Positions 39,274 through 64,000 of a stretch of 64,000 nt of DNA are shown here, one piece after another. The stretch comes from Paraphysomonas bandaiensis (lineage: Eukaryota; Protista; Chrysophyceae). The DNA lies in NCBI GenBank assembly GCA_965644295.1, contig CBFFRP010000066.1:124001-188000 (forward strand). The letters run 5' to 3'. Position numbers and translations under genes: made by a program. Each line of letters begins with the position of its first letter. Position 1 is the first letter of the stretch. The notes beneath the pieces are model-generated. The model was not told where the DNA came from. It saw nothing but the letters and a program-made list of their open reading frames with translations, and did not search any database.

Positions 39274-39440
39274 AACTGAGTATGTATCAGGAGAGGAATG
39301 AGTGGGGGAGTGATATGATGTGGTCGATCTTGTTATATATACACAATCTATGAGTGTATGTATGTATATGTAGGTGTATATATACGATATGGACGTATAC
39401 ACGTATGTACTACTGCGGTCTATATGCTATACACATGTAT
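38960..39440. repeat. AC/AT-rich microsatellite-like tracts (intron 1 and upstream of the methyltransferase)
   Basis: acatacatac, atatatac and gtatgtatgt runs. Confidence 0.8.
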
Positions 39441-41600: not shown

Positions 41601-44600
41601 CTAAACCCCATCACGTTTTCTCTGCGGGTGCTGTTCCCATGAGGTAACCTCATCGGTTGCAATGTCGCATAACAGAAGCGGGCTACTAGTATGTTCGCAC
41701 TCTGCTGCCCACCACCTCGCATTGTGTGCAATGTCCACACCTAGGCAATGTAGCCGTAGTTTGATTTCACTTATTTCTTTCTTGTACAACTCGCACTCTT
41801 TTGCCCTTTCTCGTTTCCACTCATGAAGCATCCAGTAAAAATTCTTCAATTTCAACTGTGCTGTATCCTTCGATATCACCTGGTTCATCGATTTCAATAA
41901 GGCAGTCACCGGCGATTCATCGTTCTCCACACGCATTGATAAACGAAATTCAAGCAATTCTTTCAATTTTAACTCACAAATATGAAGCTTTTTTTGTAAT
42001 TGACATGCTTCAGAACCACTCGACCAGTCATTTTCAGGTGGCCTTATATATGTGGGTTTAACCTCTCTCTCGGAGATACACCCAAAGCATGCTCGTATGC
42101 ACCTAACGACCTTATCCATCATTCCTTCTCGCTGGTTCAAGCGCATAACTTCCCAGGCATGGTCAATCATAAGGTCATCAACAGAAGAGGTCCAATTTCT
42201 CAGTGAACTCTCATGCGCATCATCATAAACACTTCCAGTGACATTGATAAAAATGTTTGCTAGTATAAGTGTTCCAACAAAGGATACAGTAACAAAGAAA
42301 ATTACAGCAGTAACTTTGGCTCCGCTGCCGTTATCACTCACGAGAAACTGCTCTGCATTCCCTCCGACCATTGCTTCAAAGTAAGATTCCCCGAGTAGTG
42401 ACGAAAATATTGCAAAGATGCTTAGTCCAAAAGATGCAAATTCAACTGCATGACCACCAAAGCGGACGAAAACACCTATTCCCAACGCAACAATAAAAAA
42501 CGCCAAAAATATGGTAAACGTGAGAACCCTCAAACTTAGCAGAGTACTGAGAAGTGACAGCATATCTGGGCCTATTAGAGGAAGAAATTGAAGGTACTTT
42601 ATGAACTTGAGGAACGCGCCCATCAGAGCTAAGCTAACGACAAATTCAGCCCACATGTAACTGAGTCCAACCCCCCAAAGATCGATGAAACGTTCGCTCT
42701 CATCTTTGTCTGAATCAGTAAATTCATTCAACTCTGCACGTCCGGATAACCTTGCGGCACATATCAAACAACACCAGATTATACCGAGAATGTACACAAC
42801 AAGATCAAATATATTCCAGCGATCCATAAAGTACCGTTTTGCGCTTACTTCTACCATTTCGTAACTTTCTTCGACCAAGAATAATAAAAATATTGCTCCC
42901 ACACAGGCGACAAGTATATCCGCTACTCCAGCTTTGCTCACGGATGAGACAGGTAATACAATAAAATCAGATGATGGAACAGTGTCACCAGCACCAGGGA
43001 AATCAATACGAAGTAGAGCGAGCTGGAGGAGATCTTCACGCACGTTTCCGACCACATATTCGATGCGCACTGCTTTAGTTGCGCCATCAACCCATCCTTC
43101 GCTCTCAAGTGATGCGATTATAGCAGTTGCAGCTGAGGAATTGTCTCCAGGCAGAACAACTTCATATGAAAGTTCACTCGAAGAAGATGAGCGTAAACGA
43201 TAACATCTCTCAGTATCAGCATCTCCCTCATCTGGTGCAAGATCATTCCAGGCATCATTGACATTGCCCGTACACGAAGATTCTTCTCGGCTCTGTAGCA
43301 AGCGAATACCACCAATGAGGCGATTATGATGATCAAGCCATCCGTCAGAAAAACCATCGGGATAGAGATTATCTATCATTGTGCTACCCAAAAATGACCA
43401 CATGTCTCCTTCATTCCCAATGTCGTTAAAAGTCTTTACAGCGTGAGCATCTTCATCTAGAGGAAATTCGTTGCCCATTGTTTTCTCGGCGGCGAGTTCA
43501 TTAAATCTGAACTTGCTGGACGATATATGACTACAAAATAATGCCGATATTGTGAAAAATATTACAAATACTGCATAGAAAATCGATTTTTTAATTGCAT
43601 ATTTGGTTATCCAAACGCAGCGATCGTACGCAACACTTTCATTTTCATTTAATGATTGTAGTACATCATGACACACTTTCAGCTTTTTGTGTGCTAATGG
43701 TAGCTCGTCAACATCGTAACTGGATTCTCGATCTTCCAATGAATTTACCAGACGTTGCTGTCTGTGTACGCGCAAAAGTGCCATGACATGTGCGTTTGGA
43801 ATTGGCCGACAGCCTTTCGCTTCTGAATTCCCAATCATATGTTCCGAAGGTCTTGGCACAGAAGCATACGAGCACTGTTCAGGGTGTACTTTGCTGACAT
43901 TTTTATTTGGCCACTTGCTACTGAAATTATTCTTCCCATTAGTATCTTCTGGTTGGTATACCTCTGCTGGACATATTCTTGCGCTTTTCGGTCGATGTGT
44001 TGTATCATATTCTTCAGGTGGAAGACATAATAATGGGTCTGCATGGGCATCAAGGAGAGCCAATACAATTCCATAATGACCATGATACACTGCACGGGAT
44101 AACAAAGTCCAGCCGGCAGAAGTTCTCCACTGGATATCTGAAACTATTGAGTTCCCATGTCCGACGGCATTGGCAATGAAGTCACTGTTCATTCTTTCTG
44201 CATTTTCCAGAAAACTTCGAACAAGGAACTCCCGACCGTATTCCACAGCAGCATACAATGGGTGAATATCTAGTGGAAGAGCTCGCTTATCTTTGTTCCA
44301 CTCCTTTTCAACTAAGGACAGAACAAACAACGCATGCTTCGTCACATCGACCTGTGATCCCGACGAAACGGAGCACATGGTATAAAGTAACGAACATAGA
44401 GACTCCAATGACTCACCAATATCAAACGACGCACCCCGGGCAAGTATTCGCTCAACTATATCACTCTGGCCGCTACTGACAGCCATATACAACGATGATT
44501 CACCGACCCTTGAACCAATTTTCAGACGCCCTTGCACATGAAGGAGATCTGGGTTTTCCCACAATCGAATAATTCCATCTTGGCTGCGCAAATATGCCCA

Positions 44601-47600
44601 ACGAAGATTGCTATCCAGATGGAGTTGCTCCGGAGCTTCATGAGCTTCTAAATATGGAAACTTTCGAGTACATATGTTTCTGGAATCAGTTTCACTTAAA
44701 GTTAACGGGCACTTGGCTCGTCGGTTAAGAAGTAGTTTAGCAGCATTAAATTGTCTCGACACCAGTGCAGTTTGCAAAACTGTTCGATACTCATCAGCAA
44801 ATAAAGTAGACCTTGACAACCAAGGCAGACCTCCATAGGTGATAGATTTTTTACAACTTTTGTACTCGTATCGAACTAAGAATAATAAATAACATACCGC
44901 TTCGCCCAATTCACAAGCAGATGGACGATTCGGGAACACAGTAGGAATCTTTACAGAAAGAGCATCCATCCGAGATTTATCATATGCATCGAGATTGGAG
45001 CATCGTTTCATTAGTTTGTCCTTGTTTTGCTCCATCACCTTCAGTATCCCAACAGAATGTACATAAGAAACTCGTTTGCGAAGCATTTCTGCTAGCCATT
45101 CAACGGCCTCTTGCTCCAGATAAAGAAGCCCTTGAATTGCAAATTTTCGTATTTTTCTAATTTCATCTTCTATTACTGCAATGGCAGTGGAATCATCGCA
45201 AGTATGGTCGACAATAGGTGGAACTTCGTGGGCATGTGGCAACCAAAAATATCTTTCTTTCGACTCACTGCGCTTGTCAGCACAAAATGATCTTTTCATC
45301 CTTGGACACCAATACACACTCCAGAACCCATGCTCTTCGTATCGGTATGATCGTTCTGTAATTGCTTTCCACGATAATTCGTGGTAAGAGTTAAATTCAT
45401 AGTTGGACTCACCAATAAAATCAGTGTAATCAGGGGATTCGATTCGGCACCACCCATGTACAGGGGTATCCAACGACTGGGTTAACCTAGGTGGAGAGCG
45501 ATAACATCCGCAACACCAGAAATCTTCAAGGTATTCTGCATGAGATGATGATATACTATTCGATCGATCGGGAGTGTACCACATAACATTTCGAAGAGAA
45601 CGAGTTCTGAGACCACTGCATCCATCATGTCCTATCATACACTCAACGAGAGCTAACCGTGATTTAGGAGGGTACAAATCATCACTGGCACTGAGAAGTA
45701 TATGTAGCGCGTCGACAGCATCGTCATCATCAACACGGATTGAAATTCCCTGTGAGATAGAACCGTTATCCTCATCGTCTTCATCATCACTCATAATAAC
45801 TTCACTGGCAGCTTCATTTCGCGTCGACGCCAGGTACGACGCCAATTTCACCCAGCAGTGGCGTACTGCATACGACAATGGCGCAGCTAAAAAAGACTGA
45901 AAAGATGCGTAGCTCGTGATATGCAATAAGGGATCAGCTTTCCCAATAAATAAAAATTCAATTGCAACGCTTCGAAGTCCAAGAGCCAATGCAACTTCGC
46001 CTGCTGTACTCAGTGAATCGTCTCGACAACTTAGCATTCGAATAGACTGCTGTTTGACGATCGCGAGGCCAATTTCCACTGCCGACTTGTCGTTTAAGTC
46101 ATTGTCATCAATGACTAGTTCCCTAAGTCCAAAATTATTCGAAATACCAGTAGCAATTTCATGTCCACCAGCAGGGCCTAAGTCATTGCCAGATATGTTC
46201 AATCGCAATAATACTTCGTTTCCCTGCAATGCATGAGCTATATGCTTGGCACCTCGCTGTCCTATACCATTCCGGCTGATATCCAGCGTCGTCAGACTTC
46301 TGTGCACCGACATGACAGACCGTGCAAGTGGAACTATTCCAGTGGGTCCCAATTGGCAACCTGAAATATTTAATATAGCCATTTGGTCACAATCCATGAC
46401 AGATTCACATAAGCATAGGGCCCCAGCGGCTCTGATTCCGCAATCAGATAAGTCAAGATGTGTCAATGACGTGCTGCCGCTAATTGCATCTGCCAATTCA
46501 GCTATAGCAGATTGTACACCTGGATTTCCGCTCAAAATAAGATGTCTCAATTGCGAGTAACTCAAAATGTCAGTGAGCATCCTAATTGCATCAATATTTA
46601 AATTACAGCTACGCATAGAAAGATAGAAAAGATGTGGGGGAAGTGAACCAGATACAAATTTGCCAATTCCAGCGCCCACTTCATCCACGATGTGAACATT
46701 TTCAATATGCAGCAATTGTAACTCAGGGCATATATTGCAGTCGGTCAAAATTTGCATCAAGTCTAGCAGTGAGTGCTTTATTGCTTGAACATCACATATA
46801 CTTATCTCGAGAAGAGTCGACCCAATCTTTTTCACTGCAGCTGAAATATGATCCACACCGACAGCATTGTGCAGGCGCAGAGCACTGTACTCCAAGACGC
46901 TATTACTTTCCATATTCGGGTTACCAATATAACATTTTAAAGCACAATTCATGTCATCGGCGTTGATGGATGAAAGTGATATCCCCCTTAATTCTAAACA
47001 ACATGATCCCTTATCACGATTACTGAAAGAGTCTGGGGTAGGAAACCAATACGCAGATTCACCAATAATAGTTGTCGTATCTGGTAAACTAAGCTTGTAA
47101 GAGATTGGAAGAGGAGGAGAAAATATAAATCGGTGTTTCAGCTCGTTACGTATATTCACATTCGAAGGATGAAGCCAGAAATCTGTCACGTCGGTATTAT
47201 CTGCTGTCTTAAAAGTGCAAGAAAATCCATGTTGCAATCGCGCGGGAGCCACTGAACTGCCTTTCATATCAATGTCATCTGGAGCATCAAACTTGCTCGC
47301 ATATATGGCTGAATATAGGTGAGTTCCATTCCTAAGTGGAACGAATTCACCAGTACTCTGTGATTGCAGCGCCAATTCGCATTTTTCTATTTGAAACGGT
47401 CGTTCCCCTAGATTGACGGACACACAGCAGTTCGGATGTAGTGAAATCGCAGGAAGTACACCGCCTAATTTACATCTTATTAAACGCCCAATAGAGAACG
47501 GTTTGACATAACATTTCTCAGCATCCGTATCACTACTGTCAAGAGCTGGCACAATCACCTCGTAGGTGTCGTCAATGCCACAGTTTTTTTTGAAGTCTTC

Positions 47601-56600: not shown

Positions 56601-59600
56601 GAACAGTTCCTCGGGAAGTATCTCCACTCTATCACCCACAGTCACTTGAGAACCTTTAACTTCTTTTTGTTGCACACTCGATGGTTCTAAGGACCATGTC
56701 ACTGCTCCCGACAAAATCTCGTAGGTTTCCAGCAGAGTATTAGCCAACGATGGATGCGGGTAGATTTCCCATCTTTCAAATGCAATACAATTCTTTGCCC
56801 ACTGATGAGCACGCAGTCCACGCACATCAGTGCCCATGAATAACGGCGATGAAATAGTATCACCCGCTTGCATGCATCGTTTATACCTCATAAATTTGGA
56901 CATGTGCGTATCCGCATGAAAAGTTCCTGCCATCAGAATGTTCTCAGAAGAATCAGGTGGATTCTGCCAATCCACACCGTCATTCACCTTTTCATTCTCA
57001 GGGTTGATTTTTTCCTTTTCTTCGTCATTCTCGACATTGCTTCTACTGACATCTTCCCCTTTTTGTACAGCACAGGCGTCATTGACCTCGTCATTTTGAC
57101 TACGAATCTCATCAGTAGATGTGGTTTTACCATCGTTCAACTTAGTCTTATCAGCCTCTGCCTCACATCCTCTTTCATCAGGGACGCTCATTTTAGTCCT
57201 GAAAGTACGGAAATCTACGTTAGAACCAATTCCTTCCATCGTCATTGCAAACAGTTGTATACCATACTCCGTATTCGACTGCAAATCCTTAACAGAAGCC
57301 ATTCTTGTCTTCAACCCAAGATGTATATTCACAACAACATCCCAAGGGATGAGATCTTTCTCCTGCTTGACGTAAACACAATTTACTCGAGCATCAGCAA
57401 GTGTTCCGTTCACTGAAATAGATATTCCGGGGAAACGAATTTCATATTCAACGAAGTCTCCTGCTGTATCTCTAACAATACGAGATACAACACCAACTTG
57501 CTGCACACTTTTGACAAAAAGCCATTGCCCAATTTCATGCTTAGGGCAATCATCGAAACCAACCGATGAATTTTTATCAATATTTTTCGGCGCGCTACAA
57601 ACTGTCACAAAGTATATCACCCGATTCCAAAAATTCTTCACACTTGTGTCGCACTCATCATTCTTCACACTCCATGAAATTGTGATACCTGTCGATGTGA
57701 TGTCTTCCTCTTTCCAATCGATATGCGGTTTCCAGATTATGCTCCTGCCTCGACGAATTTCACACATATCATTTTTTAACGACACTTTCAAATACATGGA
57801 TTTGATTATATTAACCGAATTAGAGGCACGCGCACGAAACACAGATCCCAATCTGTCCATCGGTAACTCAAGCGATTCAGACGATGTTTTAAGCACTTCT
57901 TGTATTTTATTTTCAACGTACTCAGACGGCAATAGTGTTTGGTCAATTTGACTTCTTACGGTTAAATACTTCATATATATTTGGCGTATAACCTTACGAA
58001 AATGGTTGAAAGCCACTTTATTTTCGGAAACCCGCCAAAAAAATTTGAGAAGACAGAGCACAGCATTAGCCGTGCGAGTGTGTTTCGCTGACCCAATTTC
58101 CTGAACCAATGTCCACTCCGATGATTCTAGTGTATCGGATTTAAAGAAAAGCCCATCGATTAATCTGGAGGCATCTTCATAACGGTGTGCTGCCATACGG
58201 AGCTTTATCATGTAAAGTCTGGAAGCAAGAGACGTCATGATAAAATATGCACCGGAGGAGTGAACTTCGTATATGTAATAGCATGAAGCCTCGCTTCTTT
58301 CCATAGCATACAGGGGCATCATGCCACAATGAAAAGGGCACCCCTTGAGGGATTGAAATAAGAATTTTCTGCTAGGAATTAGTACCTCCATGTTTCCTTC
58401 TTCGTCTTCTAATAATAAAAACTCTTGAATACCTTCTGTCAAGTTACGTATTTGCTGTTGTTGAAGTGGCTCAATGTCACTTAAACTCTTAACATAATAT
58501 CCAGAGCGTTCAACACATCGCAATCTCATGCCACGCCCGTGAGAGACTTGTACAACATCAAAGCTCAGTCCAAGCAGGGGCATTTCTACGAATGATATTG
58601 GCAACCGATGCGAACAGTTGGAACTCATCCGCAGCTCCGCCTCAGATACATCAGCTGTGGTCCAGAAAAGTATGCCGCTCAGTGGTTGAACACACTCAAG
58701 TAATTTCCTGACATAATGCAAGGCAGAATTCTGTTCGGCAAAACTTGCATCCAGCAGAATACCACGACGAACGAGCTGTGCAGCGGCCTGCTCTTTCTTT
58801 CTCAGTTCTTGCATCGTTGGTGACGAATCATAGTCAGGATAGTCATTATCAATAAGGCTTTGCGGAATTCTTTCAACAACTGCATTCACTCCACCATCAT
58901 CATCACTGAACAAGCGAATATATATTTCAGAGCCTCTCCACCAATGTGTTTGAGTTCTCTCCTCGTTTCGGTTCAACACTGGTTGCTCTACTGAATTACT
59001 TGAACTTGAATGTTTGAAGCGCAGGGGAATCGAAAGTTCTCCGCCACTGCTGGAGCCATTCATTTCATTCCATACCTCGGTCATGGAAGGTGGCAACGCG
59101 TAACCACGAATTACGTTTTTACCTGTTCTCCAGAAGTGATATCCGTTTACAAGGACCTGCGGGAGCAAAGATCCAAGCATGAACGAAGGAATCAATGATT
59201 CTGTGTCGTTTTCTTTTACGAACTCGGCAGTTATTTCAGAAATTGAAGATGCATCTCGTAACCCTAAGTTTCTTCTTGACAACTGCCGGGTGCGCCATAC
59301 CTCTGTGTGATTACTTCCCCCACGATACCATGTTTCTTCACGGAATTTCGCTTCAGTATCTACAATAGTCAGATTACCAAATATTAACCCCTGCTCGTAC
59401 TGGCGTTCCGAATCGGGCTCAATGTCGAATGCAATTCCAGGAGAGAACGTTTTAGACTCAGTGCCCTTTTCAACAGTAATATTGATATCATTCGTTAACG
59501 GAAGTACTGCAAACGAATCCCTTGCATCACTGGCAAACACCTGAAAGCGATATGATCGCCCAGCATAGCGCCTAATTTCATAGACATGAGCAACACCACT

Positions 59601-62600
59601 TGGCGCCATATATACTTCAAAAAATGCGGAGTTCTCAAAATCTGTACCACATTTCCAACATAGTAGCTGCGGATGGTGATCATCGGCCATGGGCGACTGA
59701 ATCTTCCACACTTGAGGGGGAGATAGCTCGTCAAACAATTCCATATGCGCACACACAACACCATGCCAGGCTGAAATCATATCACACTCATCAAGGCGAA
59801 CTTTTATGTATAACTTTCCGAGGTGTAAGACATTCCCATTCTGATCAAGCTGCGGGTGATTCAACGTTTCCAAGTTTTCAATACCATGTAGTCCATAATC
59901 ACAAAACTTTCGACCAGCACTTGATATGGCATCCGTAACCCCACTTACCAAGTCCTTTAAAAGATTCTTGCTCTTTTCAGCAAAAAAGTGTTCCCGAGAT
60001 GGAACTTCTTCGGGTTTCAACCACACGCGGATGGTATAGGTAATAACTTCGCTTTTCCTCGCACATACCGCTCGATGTACACGAACCTTTTTATTATCAC
60101 ATACCACACTACTTGGCGGTTGAGTGCCCCCTGTTGCCCCTTCCATATATATCTTGGCGTGCTCCCATAACTCATTTGGTAGATCAGTTAGAGAAGAGGA
60201 AGATTCAAACACCTCGTAGGTCTGTAGGTGTATCGACTTCGCATCCAGGGAACGCTCATAGCACCCAGGAAAAGTATCACCACTTTTTGTGTTGTTTGCA
60301 GAAACCCAGTATTTCGTATTTCCGTTTCTTTGGCTCTTCAAAAGTGCTTTAGCTTCAGGAATGTCGTTGACGCATTCCCGCAACGCTTCACGACATATCT
60401 TAGTCGAATAATGTTTTCTACCATCACTTTTATTTAATTCATCACGCAACGCTTTTACAGCTCTATTGCTAACTGGAGCGCGAACATAAAGTCTATACCC
60501 CCATTCCTCGTCAATAGACGCTACCCGACCTTCAGGAGGTGGACCAGGCGAGAAAAAGTATAGGTACACACACGAACCTTTTACAACAAGTGGCTTAGCA
60601 CCGTCCGCCCCAGGCCATTCTTCTCCAGGATTAATTACCTGTAACACTTCAGTTCGCTCTTTATCACTGTAGATGGTGAGATGTGCGTTCTTTCTCTTTC
60701 CCAATGAGCTATTGGCATCAAACACTAATATTAGGTATGGGGCATCCGATATCTCAATTTTCTCCATACTTTGCATATCAAATGGATACGGGTGTTCAGA
60801 TTCAACTATACGCTGCGTTAAATAGAGATTATTGCTAGTACTATGCCACAGCGATGAATCATGCTGACCCAAAAAAGACGCCGAAAAACTTTTTTCTCGT
60901 AAAGTAAACTGTTGAGCGGCTTCTAAAATCTGAATAATATTGCGACGACCAATTTGACCATTGCTTTCTTGGTCATTGCACCAGGTCATTATCAATGATC
61001 TCTGGCGTTGCATTATCAAAAAAAGTTTCATTGACGGAAGGCGCAAGTGGTCTTGTGATGCAGCCTTACTCAGCCATTGTACAGTGAAGCACGAACAAGC
61101 TATAAACGATGAAATGCTCATTCGAGTTGCCTCATCATACATATCTTCATTTTTCGATTCTGCCACCTCCAGCAATGTCCCTTCACATAGTGCAATGTAC
61201 GCAGCAAAGTTCACAACAACTCCAAATGCTGAGGACTGTTCGGCTTGAATCAGCCAGTGTCTTAATAGCGGTAAGGCCACACCGTTAAGAAATTGCACAA
61301 TATGGTTCTGCCATGATAAACACACATCTTCTTTCTCCGTATCAAGTGCTATTTCAAACTCACCAACTCGAATAGAACAGCTCAAAACTGAAATATCGAG
61401 TGTGATGACAAACAACATAACGTCAATTAAGGTGTTGCGAAAACTAAGGCTCGAACATAGTTGGGCAGCAGAATATGAAATGCGCACGCACGCACTCATA
61501 ATCGTGGCAGGATCCTTCCAAATTTCTTCAAAGAGTGCACCATATCGAGTACCCAGAGATTCAGAACAAGGAACTTCTCGTATTTGTAGTGGGGTCGCAG
61601 AGTACGGTCCGGATTCATACAAAATACTCTCTATAAATGTGCGCGCATCTAATGACGCAATAATATCAACTTTGCCGTTGTCCAAAAATTCCAGCAGCAG
61701 TGGAATAGAAACCAGTGGGGTACACGAAAAAGTTAACAATGTCTCGACGTCAGCTTCTGGTAAACCCGACGATCCCAGAGACAGTTCACCTGATTTTGGT
61801 TTGGAATACATTATGGTAACTTCATTGACGAGGTTGGATTCTACATAGTCACACAGTCGAAGTTCTTTCTCATCAGAGCCCTCTGCGGCCGCATAAGCTT
61901 CATGCAGTTTTGATTCGCTTCTCTGTTCTGTGACTACGCCAACAACACGCTTTATGCCATCATCACAAAAATTTCTAACAAAAAGTGACCGTGAAAAAAA
62001 CATGACACGTCCAGCAGCATTATCCATTTCAACTCTCTCCAGACGAATCGAAAATTCCTTGTTGCTGGAAGACTTTTCCTTTCCTTTTGAAGCCTTGTTG
62101 AGCTTGACAGAAAATCGTAAATCAAAAGCCGAGTCAATTTTATTACTCATACGTGTAATAGTATCCCTAAATTGATCAAGATTGGCATTCGATAAATTAT
62201 CCAAACACACTGAATCTCCAAAAAAACCAAGCCATTCGAGCAGTGTAAGTCTTGATTCCATCCCCACCTTACACAGTGTGTGAATATCTCTCAAATACTT
62301 GAACTCCTTTAAGCGCTCCCATGATGAGCAGTACCACCATCCAATGATCTCTTGCAAATGCTCGGGAGAGTATTCTTCTTTCTTTTTGTCCTTGGAGCCT
62401 TTAGTTTTACTGCCACCGGTTTCTTCTCCACCATCTTTCTCTTTAGATTCCCGCTCTTTCTCAATTTTCAATGCATTTGAGAAATCAGGAGGCAATTCGA
62501 ATGGGAGAGCTTTCTGCACAGGGCGGTTGAGGTCAAGATTTACATTAATTCGTTGCAAAACATCGAACGTGAAATCAAGAGCTGGCTCTCGGGCATCTCC

Positions 62601-64000
62601 AGGTGTAGGAGATAGCTTCACATTAAAGAGAGCAGTTGGATTAATGCTTCCTACTACGGACGACGACGACAAAATTGACCGGTTACGAAATCCACAACGC
62701 ATATTGTCCGCTCTAGGGTCACTTGTCTCGACGCTTGCGAGTAGTCCCGTCGCGCTACTCTCAGAGCGGCTCCGTAGAAAAGACAGCACTTTGTGCCGAC
62801 AGCGCATTAGATAAGGGTCAGTCATTCGAAGTGGAGTTAGTAGGTCTTCAAGGCATGTTCCGCCCCATGAGGCAGCAGCAAGATAGTACTTTTTCCCTAT
62901 CAGCACCTCGGCCACAGGAGACGGAGTGTCGATCGGGTTCACAGTCAGGCGGAGCACTCCGTCAGTTGTCACAAGTAAAGCAGACATCGTTAGTATTCGT
63001 TCTGCATCAGTAGCAGACGCCAGTAAATTACGGAACGGGAGCTCACAGGCTCCTTCATTTTTGGCGCTTTCTAATAGGGGGAGTAAATCATCTGCCTCAG
63101 CCAACATACGCGCGCCCATATAAACCTGTCCAATCGAAAGTAACTGGTTTAGTGCTGCATTTTGCTTAAAAGTTCGCACACCAGTCTCATCCTCACACCA
63201 CATATCTGGGCATGGTAAGAGTCGTACGAATACGTCTTCCACAACAGCCACGAGTAACCTACGAGCGGCCATAAATCCATTCTTATAGCGCAGAACTAGT
63301 TTGCGCACGATAGAACTAAGTTTCTGAATGGTCGACAATACGAACACAACACTCACTGTACCATCGGCACTCGGTTCTGGGGCTGGTAGGAGCAGGTCGA
63401 CGAAAGTGCTCTCCACTTTCTCAAGTTTTGTTATATCGGCACTCTCCTGTGATGTTGTCCCTCCTGTGAGAGTATCCGGTAATGGCTTGGTATCAGCCAA
63501 CATTTGCCACCGTGGAAACAGACATGCTCGTACAGGAGCAGTACCTGCAGTCTCCCCTGGATCATTTGGCAGCGCTTCCCGTTCTACTGGTGCCGCCTCT
63601 CTATCCTCCAGGACTTCAATAAGCTCTTCGATTACTTCCCTTGCGTTGAGTACAACATTAGAGGTAGTGTCCCCACCGCCATATATATCCACACAATACC
63701 GTGCTGTCAGTCGGCAAGCAGCACGCAGGGCAGTGCGGTCTCCCAGAGGAAGGGGAAAAGTCAATGGGAGGTCTTTCAGTTCCGCCAACGCAGTCTTAAG
63801 ATGACCAAGAAAGAGCGAAAGTTTGATGTGGTCACTCGTGAACGGCACACCTACACGTCTCAAGAGTAGACGAAACACTAGTTGTAAACCTTCCCATTCT
63901 GCACTCGCATTATCTCGATTGGAAACAGTTATCCAATCTGCAGGCTCCGCTTTGCTCGCACAATTGTTTTCGATATCTAAAACTCTTTCGTCGGTCAACT
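41601..64000 (-). CDS. Giant (>7465 aa, 5'-truncated) multidomain protein: CUB-like, UBA-like, FN3-like, RanBP2-type Zn finger, DUF3638/DUF3645 helicase-like core, EF-hand, 3 SPRY-like domains, RNI-like LRRs, ankyrin repeats, polycystin/TRP-type 6-TM cation channel
   Basis: 22.4-kb stop-free frame. Motifs: ESEHPY (~60800); WRCLNISC..C..C (~56400); ELIMGSGKT (~54290); IDECD (~53770); LAVPYQG..PSPSSEFSSPD (~53120); GFSGT; YDQVHTTGIDIK; QGAWRMR (~52160); DTDGNGIISLDEF (~49690); YFEV/GKWYLE/YYEIE and GDVIGC/GDIIGC SPRY motifs (~47400-49300); L..LDLS.CGI LRRs (~46000-46720); GWTLLSRAVYHGH ankyrins (~44030-44780); WNIFD, KFIKYL, FSSLLGE, ANIFI channel (~42230-43590). Confidence 0.9.
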   Translation of the reverse strand, partial: LTDERVLDIENNCASKAEPADWITVSNRDNASAEWEGLQLVFRLLLRRVGVPFTSDHIKLSLFLGHLKTALAELKDLPLTFPLPLGDRTALRAACRLTARYCVDIYGGGDTTSNVVLNAREVIEELIEVLEDREAAPVEREALPNDPGETAGTAPVRACLFPRWQMLADTKPLPDTLTGGTTSQESADITKLEKVESTFVDLLLPAPEPSADGTVSVVFVLSTIQKLSSIVRKLVLRYKNGFMAARRLLVAVVEDVFVRLLPCPDMWCEDETGVRTFKQNAALNQLLSIGQVYMGARMLAEADDLLPLLESAKNEGACELPFRNLLASATDAERILTMSALLVTTDGVLRLTVNPIDTPSPVAEVLIGKKYYLAAASWGGTCLEDLLTPLRMTDPYLMRCRHKVLSFLRSRSESSATGLLASVETSDPRADNMRCGFRNRSILSSSSVVGSINPTALFNVKLSPTPGDAREPALDFTFDVLQRINVNLDLNRPVQKALPFELPPDFSNALKIEKERESKEKDGGEETGGSKTKGSKDKKKEEYSPEHLQEIIGWWYCSSWERLKEFKYLRDIHTLCKVGMESRLTLLEWLGFFGDSVCLDNLSNANLDQFRDTITRMSNKIDSAFDLRFSVKLNKASKGKEKSSSNKEFSIRLERVEMDNAAGRVMFFSRSLFVRNFCDDGIKRVVGVVTEQRSESKLHEAYAAAEGSDEKELRLCDYVESNLVNEVTIMYSKPKSGELSLGSSGLPEADVETLLTFSCTPLVSIPLLLEFLDNGKVDIIASLDARTFIESILYESGPYSATPLQIREVPCSESLGTRYGALFEEIWKDPATIMSACVRISYSAAQLCSSLSFRNTLIDVMLFVITLDISVLSCSIRVGEFEIALDTEKEDVCLSWQNHIVQFLNGVALPLLRHWLIQAEQSSAFGVVVNFAAYIALCEGTLLEVAESKNEDMYDEATRMSISSFIACSCFTVQWLSKAASQDHLRLPSMKLFLIMQRQRSLIMTWCNDQESNGQIGRRNIIQILEAAQQFTLREKSFSASFLGQHDSSLWHSTSNNLYLTQRIVESEHPYPFDMQSMEKIEISDAPYLILVFDANSSLGKRKNAHLTIYSDKERTEVLQVINPGEEWPGADGAKPLVVKGSCVYLYFFSPGPPPEGRVASIDEEWGYRLYVRAPVSNRAVKALRDELNKSDGRKHYSTKICREALRECVNDIPEAKALLKSQRNGNTKYWVSANNTKSGDTFPGCYERSLDAKSIHLQTYEVFESSSSLTDLPNELWEHAKIYMEGATGGTQPPSSVVCDNKKVRVHRAVCARKSEVITYTIRVWLKPEEVPSREHFFAEKSKNLLKDLVSGVTDAISSAGRKFCDYGLHGIENLETLNHPQLDQNGNVLHLGKLYIKVRLDECDMISAWHGVVCAHMELFDELSPPQVWKIQSPMADDHHPQLLCWKCGTDFENSAFFEVYMAPSGVAHVYEIRRYAGRSYRFQVFASDARDSFAVLPLTNDINITVEKGTESKTFSPGIAFDIEPDSERQYEQGLIFGNLTIVDTEAKFREETWYRGGSNHTEVWRTRQLSRRNLGLRDASSISEITAEFVKENDTESLIPSFMLGSLLPQVLVNGYHFWRTGKNVIRGYALPPSMTEVWNEMNGSSSGGELSIPLRFKHSSSSNSVEQPVLNRNEERTQTHWWRGSEIYIRLFSDDDGGVNAVVERIPQSLIDNDYPDYDSSPTMQELRKKEQAAAQLVRRGILLDASFAEQNSALHYVRKLLECVQPLSGILFWTTADVSEAELRMSSNCSHRLPISFVEMPLLGLSFDVVQVSHGRGMRLRCVERSGYYVKSLSDIEPLQQQQIRNLTEGIQEFLLLEDEEGNMEVLIPSRKFLFQSLKGCPFHCGMMPLYAMERSEASCYYIYEVHSSGAYFIMTSLASRLYMIKLRMAAHRYEDASRLIDGLFFKSDTLESSEWTLVQEIGSAKHTRTANAVLCLLKFFWRVSENKVAFNHFRKVIRQIYMKYLTVRSQIDQTLLPSEYVENKIQEVLKTSSESLELPMDRLGSVFRARASNSVNIIKSMYLKVSLKNDMCEIRRGRSIIWKPHIDWKEEDITSTGITISWSVKNDECDTSVKNFWNRVIYFVTVCSAPKNIDKNSSVGFDDCPKHEIGQWLFVKSVQQVGVVSRIVRDTAGDFVEYEIRFPGISISVNGTLADARVNCVYVKQEKDLIPWDVVVNIHLGLKTRMASVKDLQSNTEYGIQLFAMTMEGIGSNVDFRTFRTKMSVPDERGCEAEADKTKLNDGKTTSTDEIRSQNDEVNDACAVQKGEDVSRSNVENDEEKEKINPENEKVNDGVDWQNPPDSSENILMAGTFHADTHMSKFMRYKRCMQAGDTISSPLFMGTDVRGLRAHQWAKNCIAFERWEIYPHPSLANTLLETYEILSGAVTWSLEPSSVQQKEVKGSQVTVGDRVEILPEELFVYNDRPDEYKSGVVLHIHDTGTCNIRQDDGRLLAQVPLSLVYMENCVDSTIPTWRCLNISCGKLNDIRSSSCRICYSHFPLHTSDRMTEIEKAVVAHRRWPWGQHCQDFDNEKLIGIDIRDDSFAFAYYSLMLRLFRCFNSAESEYAALCPSQFQSEIEALLIVVHILTEAANGKLSFLSAQHCSDAEKYLSELPVFPYNSDTAFLHAQGYFTFEHGIGSSFFDKLVYTCYEVVHTDLWTQISNTIFTVSSKKLFLCENGRPGSNYDANLLPFFRNEKQQSMVVCHELSCRSPLAEFMQQAKVLKRLSKTCQLLCTRSNESIPQSHTRDTQLEFDEMDKLIQGFLEREAERGGKDCTAYQILSDMKGHPLCQESEFDGSLYTLGLNGLDYAQMCDVLSSSSNYDESQWNLSWLFSVHDTVVDLEAAMCKKFVEYRTVTREAVLSVNAIDKVAGNALGENKSFYRLLQFAGFKRRVNVEDLIRGLLSSEMLEDLKRLNPTEHIRLQHTALTIAFGTVLSLHASRCIHSLRLLMKELMILQEDWLKLALVSDTAIDVLERYSSAGLLKQALFEARENQSSTSCLFQSAVAIARRYRDEAIQLDRVHSTGYDLTGGYSRISSLDILLQVYSFDVKFVSQRIIETNTSDVDIAGIACRGMCVDGIVVTVPSGISNLYDKDLYHQSLRKSLVSHFLLLQHLADGAANMVLAEHCVVTKYEDQSPSAKESVVINPQYLVFEVLTGFMLRDDQVKKIGELYDKCCSSHNQSAVHELIMGSGKTACIGPMLCLLLAKGERAVLQIVPDPLLEQTRSVLERVFSSVLIKQVFVMSFSRNTFDSGDSAPMLELKRKLLDAREAGHIILCSPSQVKKLLLKFIDFMTLLKDINPLVTLPPGMLPSHVRDKARDLVLFRVSPLVNKLTVMGSILDIFRAPDQSQPKGSGGVALIDECDMIFDPLKSELNFPIGDRVSVELESWRWQFAMALMSGLYAASSDKDYQPRFISQEQTSWVEDIQRIREVLWAGSQQHCVQMKPNILLLNKHWYMENLAVPIGKWALLWLTNESIMPLGRPYYDSNICNAIVEYVSGLRKNSIVPLLHGNNSERAEIVLQFARKWITVLMPHCLSKRHGIEYGLLQGKHLKSWKSRNMPAALNDSRLMLAVPYQGLETPSPSSEFSSPDVAIGLTCLAYHHEGLRLEDVKVLVAHMRYRMLNVDHGPYSVRPSRSRFETWKEDARSWCAIIDIENLLMKIPSLEHLQTTDDNTDTLKLLHKVIHMQLDAQWEYLDTYVFPRTMRIQKHKLQASGVDIGSPMLFASRIGFSGTPSNLLPLSLRDCEVQPGTRAKVIRTLINPRIVSCEPEPLSGSESSIQLLDCAGRGEFHALVDTGALITGFTNREIAYEILKRLPAERFTAVAYIDDSGTKRALMRGEDLSAPPKFLSDVHIPENQRFTFYDQVHTTGIDIKQAIDAVCLLTIGKGMTLRDLMQGAWRMRGIGKGQTIRYQMTREIVQLINRDLSICGDGDQVGLNPSPIDIVSWLVKTQMQVEDLQHLSLSIACVNNVWRRQALENLLHITRCTTQDTCSHVEPQQSLKVSDNMRFKLHTDVPLDGNVPFFSSPFVSLDTLKTMAEDCVDSKNSEGLQVRDGVEVDSNNMSASIQAISNLLDAPSTSVKIWLSQKVDELRDEKVVCPHCSQTVPDHSESCSTVSRLKKAEKVPKSYQCFKIYDSDGPIRSSIATLMRIKEEYPDAVVLGNWFKDITDFTAPDRFETMWFKDFCASCQSSGEEDDDKIGSYYDMLSYFRDASSRIAVFKDGKCMYPLSEGGLYASAVNAVDDVVTGTKSVGVEETWDIRGHDAAFCKKNVRVISLFKEEVSYPAGQGQSESLSVRLRAAIESYNDLWDERSYVFNIQCDSSGEWTAEKELNFYISALVVIEEKNRSSTSSGGGLDTEQEQEQEQEQEKEQDATAEEDKRIFVKNLYGDSISWEIEDMLSPSRRDSSFFYHLSRLTCYKPVAREPPCLLPNLPQSMLVSCNFGISDFHSHGDDIPHDSRAILRPVRCVVLVEANDFTDVVMVTLEEAQSLRYAMLNQSTFSLTSRLKLVTPSGFCFSGSASTRSNVSSVDGSFAKDLLLTRRGYREDGNHDDHRTSLFSMLQVLRLYNNELFFSPSEIWHLLQTLQSLDNLSEWVDQLLKSRPRLGMDGVKSLEGPIRRVLGVDSDLQSKDLIYRNLLTAATAIQSIREKLLESYQGSQSFFAKYKYFKSKFVEITGNTNFESDLRSEFAEKLIATVGADVPDIEGVVNSVVEMTDTDGNGIISLDEFMSAILEPTREEEAIYCREIILTEMKNERMPSTDTTTNKENREMWLLQARQKEASDGANEIAICSSTDSFSETDCELLPAHHVMSSFGNVAQPIIASGENLIVHTGIARCPASNFNRTTIIPNGVVLVPFNGSDKFYFEVAIVKSKGSLSVGWVDGMWNRAKDEQHICTISGHPALPGSDNVGSHIFSTSSVVYSVGDVIGCLADMTGRHARFYFNGVAVESLSGLKPLDWAFYISPVVIFEAGLEFDLNLGQCGFKFAPGLPGVRPVFATVVEFLRGIVSESTKHIGYHESSFLCFGPRVVAEEKEDKIELRQKNYTWKSNNVLLSECALFTGKWYLEIVFDGYRYWGEYDSGIGCVGPDYFPALDMSKNPATHPQGYILSPLTRSICHADKRAIFTEERQSWGKKRVRIHMRVDMDERRIDYFQRKKDGSLQYLTSFDSILLPMLRPIISIFGSHRVFVPKNVPDFVDGYENMVRQQNLIPQTKLRVVDDMKVKQNMIPTSGAPFVGIRNDGVITSHDGYISLVATFDGITWPCGVIYYEIEVIELGGEGRGRLNPTRNPNEGGQMTIGWATKKFRGESYSYRGVGDDRLSWGLRAADSRPWGRWANVSGDKTGPCFVHSGKPVPWESNGVPVPQHPPSSGRSIASGDIIGCSFDTDTGVCEYFLFRQKRILSKFEDESKRKRLLRFEDFKKNCGIDDTYEVIVPALDSSDTDAEKCYVKPFSIGRLIRCKLGGVLPAISLHPNCCVSVNLGERPFQIEKCELALQSQSTGEFVPLRNGTHLYSAIYASKFDAPDDIDMKGSSVAPARLQHGFSCTFKTADNTDVTDFWLHPSNVNIRNELKHRFIFSPPLPISYKLSLPDTTTIIGESAYWFPTPDSFSNRDKGSCCLELRGISLSSINADDMNCALKCYIGNPNMESNSVLEYSALRLHNAVGVDHISAAVKKIGSTLLEISICDVQAIKHSLLDLMQILTDCNICPELQLLHIENVHIVDEVGAGIGKFVSGSLPPHLFYLSMRSCNLNIDAIRMLTDILSYSQLRHLILSGNPGVQSAIAELADAISGSTSLTHLDLSDCGIRAAGALCLCESVMDCDQMAILNISGCQLGPTGIVPLARSVMSVHRSLTTLDISRNGIGQRGAKHIAHALQGNEVLLRLNISGNDLGPAGGHEIATGISNNFGLRELVIDDNDLNDKSAVEIGLAIVKQQSIRMLSCRDDSLSTAGEVALALGLRSVAIEFLFIGKADPLLHITSYASFQSFLAAPLSYAVRHCWVKLASYLASTRNEAASEVIMSDDEDDEDNGSISQGISIRVDDDDAVDALHILLSASDDLYPPKSRLALVECMIGHDGCSGLRTRSLRNVMWYTPDRSNSISSSHAEYLEDFWCCGCYRSPPRLTQSLDTPVHGWCRIESPDYTDFIGESNYEFNSYHELSWKAITERSYRYEEHGFWSVYWCPRMKRSFCADKRSESKERYFWLPHAHEVPPIVDHTCDDSTAIAVIEDEIRKIRKFAIQGLLYLEQEAVEWLAEMLRKRVSYVHSVGILKVMEQNKDKLMKRCSNLDAYDKSRMDALSVKIPTVFPNRPSACELGEAVCYLLFLVRYEYKSCKKSITYGGLPWLSRSTLFADEYRTVLQTALVSRQFNAAKLLLNRRAKCPLTLSETDSRNICTRKFPYLEAHEAPEQLHLDSNLRWAYLRSQDGIIRLWENPDLLHVQGRLKIGSRVGESSLYMAVSSGQSDIVERILARGASFDIGESLESLCSLLYTMCSVSSGSQVDVTKHALFVLSLVEKEWNKDKRALPLDIHPLYAAVEYGREFLVRSFLENAERMNSDFIANAVGHGNSIVSDIQWRTSAGWTLLSRAVYHGHYGIVLALLDAHADPLLCLPPEEYDTTHRPKSARICPAEVYQPEDTNGKNNFSSKWPNKNVSKVHPEQCSYASVPRPSEHMIGNSEAKGCRPIPNAHVMALLRVHRQQRLVNSLEDRESSYDVDELPLAHKKLKVCHDVLQSLNENESVAYDRCVWITKYAIKKSIFYAVFVIFFTISALFCSHISSSKFRFNELAAEKTMGNEFPLDEDAHAVKTFNDIGNEGDMWSFLGSTMIDNLYPDGFSDGWLDHHNRLIGGIRLLQSREESSCTGNVNDAWNDLAPDEGDADTERCYRLRSSSSSELSYEVVLPGDNSSAATAIIASLESEGWVDGATKAVRIEYVVGNVREDLLQLALLRIDFPGAGDTVPSSDFIVLPVSSVSKAGVADILVACVGAIFLLFLVEESYEMVEVSAKRYFMDRWNIFDLVVYILGIIWCCLICAARLSGRAELNEFTDSDKDESERFIDLWGVGLSYMWAEFVVSLALMGAFLKFIKYLQFLPLIGPDMLSLLSTLLSLRVLTFTIFLAFFIVALGIGVFVRFGGHAVEFASFGLSIFAIFSSLLGESYFEAMVGGNAEQFLVSDNGSGAKVTAVIFFVTVSFVGTLILANIFINVTGSVYDDAHESSLRNWTSSVDDLMIDHAWEVMRLNQREGMMDKVVRCIRACFGCISEREVKPTYIRPPENDWSSGSEACQLQKKLHICELKLKELLEFRLSMRVENDESPVTALLKSMNQVISKDTAQLKLKNFYWMLHEWKRERAKECELYKKEISEIKLRLHCLGVDIAHNARWWAAECEHTSSPLLLCDIATDEVTSWEQHPQRKRDGV

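What the first reader, a model, noticed from the sequence alone, without database searches (positions are those of the whole stretch)
41601..64000. Giant helicase-SPRY-LRR-ankyrin protein ending in a polycystin-type ion channel: candidate ligand-gated sensor-channel
Seen: one uninterrupted frame joins a P-loop/DExD module (GSGKT, IDECD, FSGT, QGAWRMR), an EF-hand, three SPRY-like domains, RNI-like LRRs and ankyrins to a complete S1 / large loop / S2-S6 channel with pore FSSLLGE (compare PKD2 LGD). Established: TRP/PKD2 channels are tetramers; DUF3638/DUF3645 proteins are large and poorly characterised; ryanodine receptors also combine three SPRY domains, EF-hands and a C-terminal 6-TM pore. 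Inference: a roughly 0.8-MDa subunit (over 3 MDa as a tetramer) in which an NTPase and recognition domains gate a Ca2+-permeable pore, either RyR-like by convergence or an NLR-like immune/cell-death device. I do not recognise this architecture as described.
Basis: partly seen in the sequence, partly recalled or inferred. Interest (0 to 1): 0.88.

Follow-up and report, generated by a model that had tools for sequence, protein, structure and literature searches.

The report
Giant ATPase fused to polycystin channel
A single intron-free gene of 23 kb in a marine protist encodes an 871-kDa protein. It joins a huge, poorly understood helicase-like ATPase to a complete polycystin-2-type ion channel, and this conserved but undescribed build would be among the largest ion-channel subunits known.

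Summary
The minus strand carries one open frame from 41601 past the window end. On the extended contig it starts at an ATG 844 bases beyond the window, giving 7,747 codons and 871 kDa with no stop or intron.

Pfam, PDB sequence search and an AlphaFold model (pLDDT 87.8; Foldseek PKD2, E 1e-21) show that the last ~660 residues are a full polycystin-2-type channel subunit: S1, TOP domain, S2-S6, filter LGE. Upstream lie a DUF3638/DUF3645 SF2-helicase-like ATPase, an EF-hand, SPRY domains, RNI-type LRRs and ankyrins.

It is not an assembly accident:
- A chrysophyte (Epipyxis) has a collinear 7,876-aa orthologue, 43% identical end to end.
- Two more giants (7,425 and 6,206 aa) and several metagenome contigs show the same domain order.
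- 13 of 16 coding differences from a second strain are synonymous.
- PolyA RNA covers the 3' 3 kb.

The first 4,300 residues, the EF-hand and the SPRYs are the standard chassis of a widespread channel-less family. The resemblance to ryanodine receptors is therefore incidental. Only LRR-ankyrin-channel is the clade's addition.

I found no paper describing the architecture. Gating, conduction and stoichiometry remain inferred, and a full-length transcript is not shown.

The parts
41601..64000 (-). Part of the giant ORF that lies in the window. Stop codon at 41601-41603. The ORF continues 844 bases past the window to its ATG at window-equivalent 64844 (= L002:1844). Full length 7,747 aa.
62700..64000 (-). 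C-terminal part of the first conserved chassis block (aa 100-715). An alpha/beta plus helical domain shared by almost all DUF3638 giants. Its fold is nearest to the 'cysteine protease-like' domain of Legionella AnkH/AnkD.
60045..61787 (-). Conserved chassis block 2 (aa 1020-1600), found in 119 of 121 giants compared.
57825..59627 (-). Conserved chassis block 3 (aa 1740-2340).
55275..57824 (-). Stretch of about 850 aa (aa 2340-3190) matched only in the Epipyxis orthologue. Contains a weak fn3-like hit.
51855..54554 (-). DUF3638/DUF3645 SF2-helicase-like ATPase core (aa 3430-4330). Walker A GSGKT 54273-54287, Walker B DECD 53763-53774, motif III FSGT 52653-52664, motif VI QGAWRMR 52146-52166.
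49665..49703 (-). EF-hand Ca2+-binding loop DTDGNGIISLDEF (aa 5048-5060).
   Evidence: the aligned domain is significant in P0039
48909..49265 (-). SPRY domain (aa 5194-5312).
47631..47978 (-). SPRY domain (aa 5623-5738).
46179..46553 (-). RNI-type leucine-rich repeats (LRR_6, three repeats, aa about 6098-6222).
44025..44507 (-). Ankyrin repeats (aa about 6780-6940).
42210..43586 (-). Polycystin-2-type channel module (aa 7087-7545): S1 7087-7105, TOP/polycystin domain 7106-7300 with a conserved Cys pair, S2-S4, S5 7440-7458, pore helix and filter, S6 7511-7529.
42387..42395 (-). Selectivity-filter triplet L-G-E (aa 7484-7486), aligned with L-G-D of PKD2L1.
41604..42209 (-). Cytosolic C-terminal tail (aa 7546-7747). 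Helical and coiled-coil-like, with a terminal WW...LLLxDI...WE motif shared with Epipyxis.

Best explanation
This is a genuine single gene. Its 871-kDa product is a membrane-anchored member of the eukaryotic DUF3638/DUF3645 giant ATPase family, with a complete polycystin-2 (TRPP)-type channel subunit as its C-terminus.

Shown:
- The frame is continuous.
- The whole domain order is conserved in other organisms: chassis, SF2-like ATPase, EF-hand, SPRY, LRR, ankyrin, S1, TOP, S2-S6, tail.
- The ATPase motifs are intact.
- The PKD2 fold, pore helix and G-(D/E) filter are present.
- The gene is under purifying selection.
- The 3' part is found in polyA RNA.

Inferred from established PKD2 topology:
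- The first 7,086 residues and the tail face the cytosol.
- The disulfide-bearing TOP domain faces outside or into a lumen.

Inferred mechanism:
- Four pore modules form a non-selective or Ca2+-permeable cation pore, as in PKD2.
- The ankyrin/LRR arm links the pore to the ATPase machine, so the two are coupled as in TRP 'chanzymes'.
- Coupling could run either way. ATP-driven or partner-induced changes in the cytosolic machine could gate the pore. Alternatively, local Ca2+ entering through the pore, read by the EF-hand, could switch the ATPase on at that membrane.
For: Single gene:
- The ORF is open for 7,778 codons, against 403-647 stops in the other frames of that strand.
- Epipyxis P0001 is collinear and 43% identical across all 7,747 residues, with peaks in the ATPase core (52-75%) and the pore (67%).
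- The same domain order occurs in P0039 (7,425 aa) and P0276 (6,206 aa).
- It also occurs on metagenome contigs L006/L007, L008 and the P0002 contig, and as far as the LRRs on L005, whose contig ends there.
- In the core tree (ours, P0001) group with P0039 and P0211 (SH-aLRT 88) inside the SPRY subfamily (98). The AU test does not reject one clade (p 0.96).
- 13 of 16 coding differences from a second strain are synonymous.

Channel:
- PDB sequence search gives PKD2L1 at E 4e-18 and PKD2 at 3e-16, aligned from S1 to S6, with LGE opposite LGD.
- The AlphaFold model has pLDDT 87.8 and pTM 0.84. The best Foldseek match is PKD2 9dwq_A (E 1e-21, TM 0.79 by target). TRPML matches are far weaker.
- The filter position is D, E or N in 59 of 80 relatives.

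ATPase:
- Motifs I, II, III, V and VI are invariant or nearly so across 23 giants.
- There are marginal PriA matches over motifs Q/I, and the nearest ESM clusters are ResIII/DEAD helicases.

Expression:
- PolyA marine metatranscriptome contigs and a probable culture transcriptome cover 41501-44618 at 99% identity or more.
Against: - No read evidence spans the ATPase to the channel. RNA contigs cover only the 3' 3 kb plus one piece at 45103-45266. The one run that spans all 6 kb laid may be DNA.
- Conduction, selectivity, gating and stoichiometry are untested.
- The filter acid is Asn in Epipyxis and in P0006, so a strict Ca2+-selective filter is not conserved.
- The tetramer prediction of the pore gave no answer.
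- The biochemical activity of DUF3638 ATPases is unknown, and no coupling mechanism has been demonstrated.
Confidence: 0.6

Rival explanations
1. PKD1-like role. The giant is the single large, poorly conducting or non-conducting subunit of a 1:3 heteromer with ordinary small PKD2-like subunits encoded elsewhere in the genome. In that case the complex holds one ATPase machine, not four.
For: - The genome has at least 15 other PKD_channel loci with open frames of 400-1,500 aa.
- Animal PKD1 (4,303 aa) works this way in solved PKD1/PKD2 complexes, which were among the fold hits.
- Four 7,000-aa cytosolic domains around one pore would be sterically demanding (inference).
Against: - The pore helix, filter and S6 align with PKD2/PKD2L1 far better than with PKD1L3: E 4e-18 against 1e-4.
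- The module has the 6-TM PKD2 layout, not the 11-TM PKD1 layout with PLAT/GPS.
Confidence: 0.2
2. Anchor or sensor only. The channel module mainly tethers and localises the ATPase giant to a particular membrane (for example flagellar or vacuolar), or acts as a mechanical or ligand sensor. Ion flux would not be the output.
For: - Channel-less relatives carry other C-terminal targeting or binding modules instead: UBA, thioredoxin-like, RanBP zinc fingers. This suggests that the C-terminus of the family is a swappable 'address'.
- The filter acid is replaced by Asn in two members.
Against: The pore region is the second most conserved part of the protein, 67% identical to Epipyxis at aa 7401-7500. 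The pore helix, glycine and S6 are kept across the clade. That is not expected for a mere anchor.
Confidence: 0.12
3. NLR-like immune or cell-death device. LRR/SPRY modules would recognise a non-self ligand, the NTPase would switch, and the pore would kill or alarm the cell.
For: - NTPase plus LRR plus a membrane-permeabilising output resembles plant resistosomes in logic.
- One relative (P0181) joins a DUF3638 core to NACHT, AAA_16 and WD40 modules.
Against: - There is no STAND/NACHT/NB-ARC domain here.
- This is the only locus in the genome that joins DUF3638 to a PKD channel.
- It has a collinear full-length orthologue in a chrysophyte and differs from a second strain mostly by synonymous changes. 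That is the opposite of diversifying immune receptors.
Confidence: 0.06
4. Artefact. Two neighbouring genes were joined by misassembly, or are read as one because a stop or an intron was missed.
For: Only the 3' 3 kb is shown in RNA. Giant ORFs invite suspicion.
Against: - There is no stop in 23.3 kb at 43% G+C.
- The same order is seen in at least six independent assemblies.
- A second data set of the same species carries a 19.7-kb contig that crosses the whole 6 kb laid, from beyond the stop codon up into the stretch between the SPRYs and the LRRs.
Confidence: 0.02

Closest known systems
Polycystin-2 / PKD2L1 (TRPP channels; PDB 9dwq, 5z1w, 5t4d)
   Same: - 6-TM layout with a large S1-S2 TOP domain carrying a Cys pair.
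- S4 with K residues, a pore helix, an L-G-acid filter and S6.
- The fold match is unambiguous.
   Different: - PKD2 is under 1,000 aa with a short N-terminus. Here 7,086 residues precede S1.
- The filter is LGE rather than LGD.
- Pfam finds no domain in the C-terminal tail, PKD2's tail EF-hand included.
Channel-less DUF3638/DUF3645 giants of protists (e.g. Bigelowiella P0158, Thecamonas P0177, oomycete, kinetoplastid and Monosiga members; UniRef label 'ubiquitinyl hydrolase 1')
   Same: - Four conserved blocks over the first 4,330 aa, including the SF2-like ATPase core (30-40% identity).
- The SPRY subfamily also shares the EF-hand and the SPRYs.
   Different: - They end after the SPRYs or carry UBA, thioredoxin or zinc-finger modules.
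- Among the giants listed, only P0001 carries LRR_6 or a PKD channel. Ankyrin repeats appear once more (P0258), and none of these proteins was scanned for membrane segments.
- Our clade adds about 2,000 aa: LRR, ankyrin and PKD channel.
Ryanodine receptors
   Same: A very large cytosolic assembly with SPRY domains and an EF-hand in front of a C-terminal 6-TM pore. The size is comparable: 871 kDa per subunit here against about 565 kDa.
   Different: - No RIH, RyR-repeat or IP3R-type domains.
- The pore is PKD2-type with a TOP domain.
- The SPRYs and EF-hand are inherited from the ATPase family, not from a channel lineage.
TRP 'chanzymes' (TRPM6/7 with alpha-kinase, TRPM2 with a NUDT9-like domain); from established knowledge
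   Same: A TRP-superfamily pore covalently joined to a nucleotide-using enzyme domain on the cytosolic side.
   Different: - The enzyme here is N-terminal, about 20 times larger, and of a different class (SF2-helicase-like ATPase).
- The channel subfamily is TRPP.
Oomycete PKDRR proteins (PMC7399828)
   Same: Stramenopile-lineage chimeric PKD2-type channels carrying domains otherwise known from RyRs.
   Different: - PKDRR has two RyR 'R' domains after the channel.
- It is of ordinary size and lacks the ATPase, SPRY and LRR modules.

Membership tests
Polycystin-2-type (TRPP) channel | PKD_channel and Polycystin (TOP) domains above Pfam cut-offs | tested here: met
   PF08016 at 46.2 bits (cut-off 22.4) and PF20519 at 29.5 bits (cut-off 23.6).
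Polycystin-2-type (TRPP) channel | Six TM helices with the TOP domain between S1 and S2, and a fold superposable on solved PKD2 | tested here: met
   Hydropathy. AlphaFold model with pLDDT 87.8. Foldseek PKD2 at E 1e-21, TM 0.79 by target and 0.67 by query.
Polycystin-2-type (TRPP) channel | Pore helix followed by an L-G-D/E selectivity filter | tested here: met
   LLGE 7483-7486 aligns with ILGD of PKD2L1. The clade shows D, E or N at this position.
Polycystin-2-type (TRPP) channel | Tetrameric assembly and cation conduction | tested here: inconclusive
   The predicted 4-copy complex of the pore gave 'no answer'. Conduction cannot be tested with these tools.
DUF3638/DUF3645 giant ATPases | DUF3638 and DUF3645 domains above cut-off, in that order | tested here: met
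   93.8 bits (cut-off 31) and 44.1 bits (cut-off 25).
DUF3638/DUF3645 giant ATPases | Shared N-terminal chassis blocks and intact NTPase motifs | tested here: met
   Blocks at aa 100-715, 1020-1600 and 1740-2340 match 118-119 of 121 giants. GxGKT, DExD, SGT and QGAxRMRG are invariant or nearly so.
Deubiquitinase ('ubiquitinyl hydrolase 1', UniRef label of the family) | A conserved catalytic Cys/His pair in a peptidase fold | tested here: inconclusive
   - The N-terminal domain fold is nearest to Legionella AnkH/AnkD, the 'cysteine protease-like' domain (Z 11.3 and 9.9).
- Family-invariant residues are H219, Y272 and G461, with no conserved Cys.
- No PDB sequence hit.
Ryanodine/IP3 receptor | RIH, RyR-repeat or Ins145_P3_rec domains and an RyR-type pore | tested here: not met
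   No such Pfam hits even at E up to 1. The pore is PKD2-type.
NLR / STAND immune receptors | A NACHT or NB-ARC STAND NTPase next to the LRRs | tested here: not met
   The NTPase is DUF3638, SF2-like. There is no NACHT or NB-ARC hit.
Oomycete PKDRR | Two RyR 'R' domains C-terminal to the PKD channel | tested here: not met
   The tail aa 7540-7747 has no Pfam hit. The family definition comes from PMC7399828.

The most novel reading that the evidence does not exclude
A new class of TRP-family channel-enzyme. In it, a cytosolic SF2-type ATPase machine of about 7,000 residues is mechanically coupled, through an ankyrin/LRR arm, to a PKD2-type pore. ATP hydrolysis or partner binding would gate cation flux, or local Ca2+ entry would license the ATPase. 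A homotetramer would be about 3.5 MDa, larger than a ryanodine receptor. The variant with a built-in phosphagen kinase (P0276) would then point to an ATP-hungry function at a site remote from mitochondria, such as a flagellum.
Probability: 0.3. Interest if true: 0.85.

Novelty: new variant of a known kind. Interest (0 to 1): 0.7.

Why it matters
It ties two unknowns together. DUF3638/DUF3645 giants are present across protists, from oomycetes and kinetoplastids to choanoflagellates, yet have no established function. Polycystin channels are ancient, but their gating is poorly understood.

A natural covalent fusion conserved over deep divergence says that the two act at the same place and probably on each other. 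That gives a testable handle on both: where the ATPase works (at a membrane, next to a cation pore and an EF-hand) and what can regulate a PKD2-type pore.

It would also be one of the largest ion-channel subunits known. It is an intron-free 23-kb gene in a genome whose other two DUF3638 loci show only short open frames, which suggests that they are split.

Tried and rejected
- I first suspected that the family's 'ubiquitinyl hydrolase' label came from the viral-tegument-like DUB family. That paper does not mention these proteins. No conserved Cys was found, so I dropped the idea.
- PDB profile searches gave nothing for the N-terminal domain. For the ATPase core they gave only marginal PriA hits (E 0.68).
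- The ESM Atlas feature hits scored 0.78-0.81 (SseL for the N-terminus, ResIII/DEAD for the core). I treat them as leads only.
- Complex prediction on four copies of S5-S6 returned no answer. It counts neither for nor against binding.
- The metagenome scan with the clade's channel alignment returned one 1.5-kb locus only.
- Self-BLAST of the SPRY region found no internal repeats, so a third SPRY is unconfirmed.
- Literature searches on DUF3638/DUF3645, their Pfam and InterPro numbers, polycystins in stramenopiles, and chanzyme/SPRY/PKD_channel found no description of the architecture.
- Epipyxis P0001 is probably a genome-based gene model. A genome paper exists for that strain. I therefore did not count it as transcript evidence.
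Full report
**1. What is in the sequence**

The open frame lies on the minus strand. Window 41601..63998 holds 7,465 codons without a stop, while the other two frames of that strand hold 403 and 647 stops. G+C is even across the frame (0.41-0.47). It drops to 0.34-0.39 in the 4 kb on the 3' side (38001-42000), and the sequence just 5' of the start codon is visibly AT-rich.

The window is G000:C66:124001-188000, on a 553-kb contig of a 62.5-Mb assembly. I fetched the next 18 kb. The frame stays open to window-equivalent 64937, and an AT-rich stretch lies before the first ATG at 64844. The full ORF is 7,747 aa and 871 kDa. It has no intron.

**2. Domain map (full-length numbering)**

Pfam hits:

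| Domain | Residues | E-value |
|---|---|---|
| DUF3638 | 3475-3623 | 1e-26 |
| DUF3645 | 3897-3927 | 1e-11 |
| EF-hand loop DTDGNGIISLDE | 5048-5059 | 1.4e-3 (below cut-off) |
| SPRY | 5194-5312 | 6e-8 |
| SPRY | 5623-5738 | 4e-7 |
| LRR_6, three repeats | about 6100-6220 | 1e-16 |
| Ankyrin | about 6780-6940 | 2e-8 |
| Polycystin_dom | 7227-7292 | 6.5e-7 |
| PKD_channel | 7313-7540 | 5e-12 |

- The EF-hand loop is canonical, and the aligned domain is significant in relative P0039.
- Hydropathy finds strong membrane segments only at the C-terminus. These are S1 at 7087-7105, a 195-residue loop, S2-S4, S5 at 7440-7458, the pore helix and filter (FSSLLGE, LGE at 7484-7486), and S6 at 7511-7529. 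A 200-residue helical tail follows.

**3. The C-terminus is a polycystin-2-type channel subunit**

- phmmer against PDB sequences gives PKD2L1 (5z1w, E 4e-18) and PKD2 (3e-16). The alignment runs from S1 to S6, with LGE opposite the LGD filter. PKD1L3 scores only 1e-4.
- I built an AlphaFold model of aa 7060-7620 from an 80-sequence alignment. It reached pLDDT 87.8 and pTM 0.84.
- Foldseek against the PDB puts PKD2 and PKD2L1 in the first 46 places. The best is 9dwq_A at E 1e-21, TM 0.79 by target. TRPML follows at E 1e-9.
- The TOP loop keeps the Cys pair that is common in the family consensus.
- By the established PKD2 topology, the first 7,086 residues and the tail are cytosolic.

**4. The N-terminal two thirds are a known but uncharacterised chassis**

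- A search restricted to giants (4,100-13,000 aa), using the ATPase core as query, found 180 proteins. They come from oomycetes, kinetoplastids, Thecamonas, Monosiga, Bigelowiella, Cafeteria and many metagenomes. UniRef labels them 'ubiquitinyl hydrolase 1'.
- Local jackhmmer shows four blocks of our protein in 118-121 of 121 such giants: aa 100-715, 1020-1600, 1740-2340 and 3430-4330. The stretch 2340-3190 is matched only in Epipyxis.
- In a 23-sequence alignment of the core, the SF2 motifs are invariant or nearly so: MGxGKT, DExD, FSGTPSN, the motif V stretch (TTG.D.KQ) and QGAxRMRG.
- A profile search of the PDB gave only marginal PriA hits over motifs Q/I (E 0.68). The nearest named ESM clusters are ResIII/DEAD helicases at about 0.8, which is a lead only.
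- I call it SF2-helicase-like. No substrate is known.
- The first block folds with pLDDT 80.6. Its best solved neighbours, by two aligners, are the Legionella effectors AnkH (Z 11.3, 225 residues aligned) and AnkD/LegA15 (Z 9.9; Foldseek probability 0.98 but E 0.025).
- The domain in those effectors has been called cysteine-protease-like and, later, a GTPase (PMC9757750).
- The family-invariant residues in our block are H219, Y272 and G461, with no conserved cysteine. The deubiquitinase label is therefore not supported here.

**5. The fusion is real and conserved**

- A search for giants with a related channel found P0001 (7,876 aa) from the chrysophyte Epipyxis sp. PR26KG. It is collinear with our protein from the first residues to the last. 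Identity is 43% overall, 52-75% in the ATPase core and 67% in the pore.
- The exhaustive representative search added P0039 (7,425 aa). It is only 26% identical in the channel but has the same order: DUF3638, DUF3645, EF-hand, SPRY, LRR_6, Ank, Polycystin_dom, PKD_channel.
- P0276 (6,206 aa) has that order too, plus a phosphagen-kinase domain between the ATPase and the EF-hand.
- Three metagenome sequences, on four contigs, carry the same series as abutting same-strand gene calls: L006/L007, L008 and the P0002 contig.
- L005 shows DUF3638/DUF3645, a GT intron, three SPRYs and LRR_6 before the contig ends.
- At least 35 of the 151 best channel relatives carry our ankyrin/linker or LRR module upstream. 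Most are N-terminally truncated fragments, among them one from Pinguiococcus.
- In an IQ-TREE (PMSF) tree of the ATPase core, ours and Epipyxis (100) group with P0039 and P0211 (SH-aLRT 88) inside the SPRY-bearing subfamily (98). The AU test does not reject a single clade of the channel-bearing giants (p 0.96). Long branches call for caution.
- In its own genome this is the only locus that joins the two families. There are three DUF3638 loci and at least 15 PKD_channel loci.

**6. Selection and expression**

- A 19.7-kb contig from another data set of the same species covers the whole 6 kb laid, with 18 differences. Of the 16 listed differences inside the ORF, 13 are synonymous.
- PolyA metatranscriptome contigs from a marine sample, and a probable culture transcriptome, cover 41501-44618 at 99% identity or more. 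One more piece lies at 45103-45266. Coverage fades away from the 3' end, as expected for polyA-primed libraries on a 23-kb mRNA.
- No evidence reaches the ATPase region, so a full-length transcript is inferred, not shown.

**7. Interpretation**

The SPRYs and the EF-hand came with the ATPase family and occur in channel-less members. No RyR/IP3R-specific domain is present.
- The NLR analogy lacks a STAND NTPase. It also sits badly with an orthologous gene under purifying selection that is the genome's only fusion of the two families.
- What the clade added is LRR, ankyrin and a PKD2 channel. Other subfamilies carry UBA, thioredoxin-like or zinc-finger modules at that end.
- The best reading is a TRP-type 'chanzyme': a membrane-embedded PKD2-type pore covalently tied to a giant cytosolic ATPase with a Ca2+ sensor. 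The direction of coupling is unknown.
- The rivals are a PKD1-like single subunit in a heteromer, an anchor or sensor role without conduction, an immune device, and an artefact. They are weighed in their own sections.

**8. Novelty**

Full-text searches for the domain names, accession numbers and obvious word combinations found no description of this architecture. The nearest published item is the oomycete PKDRR family, which is a different and much smaller chimera. The sequences themselves already sit unannotated in public collections. I rate this a new variant of known kinds (TRPP channels, DUF3638 giants, TRP chanzymes), with high curiosity value and clear experiments.

**9. Limits**

- The organism's name is coded in the tools. 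From its closest orthologue (a chrysophyte), a Pinguiococcus fragment, the marine RNA runs and an unchecked first-stage note about a mastigoneme gene, I infer a marine ochrophyte stramenopile.

Noticed in passing
window 43951-44016: One polyA metatranscriptome contig (run X5) skips 66 bases, 22 codons in frame, in the low-complexity linker after the ankyrins. The ends read GT..AG only on the plus strand, antisense to the gene, and are flanked by a GAAGA microhomology. It is probably an allele, a template switch or an antisense RNA rather than a sense intron.
   Followed up: partly
P0276 (ENA, 6,206 aa), residues 2133-2533: A family member carries an ATP:guanido phosphotransferase (arginine/creatine-kinase-like) domain between the ATPase core and the EF-hand. 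This hints at local ATP buffering for the machine.
   Followed up: partly
P0181 (Logan, 4,498 aa): A relative has the DUF3638/DUF3645 core at its N-terminus, followed by NACHT, AAA_16, WD40, EF-hand and SPRY modules. This is another unusual recombination of the same ATPase.
   Followed up: no
G000:C199:257195-257728 and G000:C151:59377-59670: The other two DUF3638 loci of this genome show open frames of only 241 and 130 aa, so they are presumably split by introns. The 23-kb gene studied here has none.
   Followed up: no
G000:C146:526380-529298 and G000:C234:28600-31786: PKD_channel matches lie in pairs a few kb apart. At C146 both are in one 1,525-aa open frame. At C234 they are in two frames of about 730 aa, which look like tandem genes. 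They are part of at least 15 polycystin-like loci and are candidates for partner subunits.
   Followed up: no
window 30004-31998 (-): A 664-aa ORF encodes a hybrid histidine kinase with an ethylene-receptor-like N-terminal domain (ETR1_N), HisKA, HATPase_c and a receiver domain.
   Followed up: partly
L002:4442-8140 (-), i.e. 3.4-7.1 kb beyond the window end: The next ORF upstream (1,232 aa) has hits to DUF6094 methyltransferase, spectrin repeat and hemerythrin. No obvious link to the giant gene.
   Followed up: no
window 41604-41700 (last ~30 codons): The extreme C-terminus keeps a motif shared with Epipyxis (WW...LLLxDIxxD...WE) although the rest of the tail is poorly conserved. It may be a sorting or partner-binding signal.
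   Followed up: no
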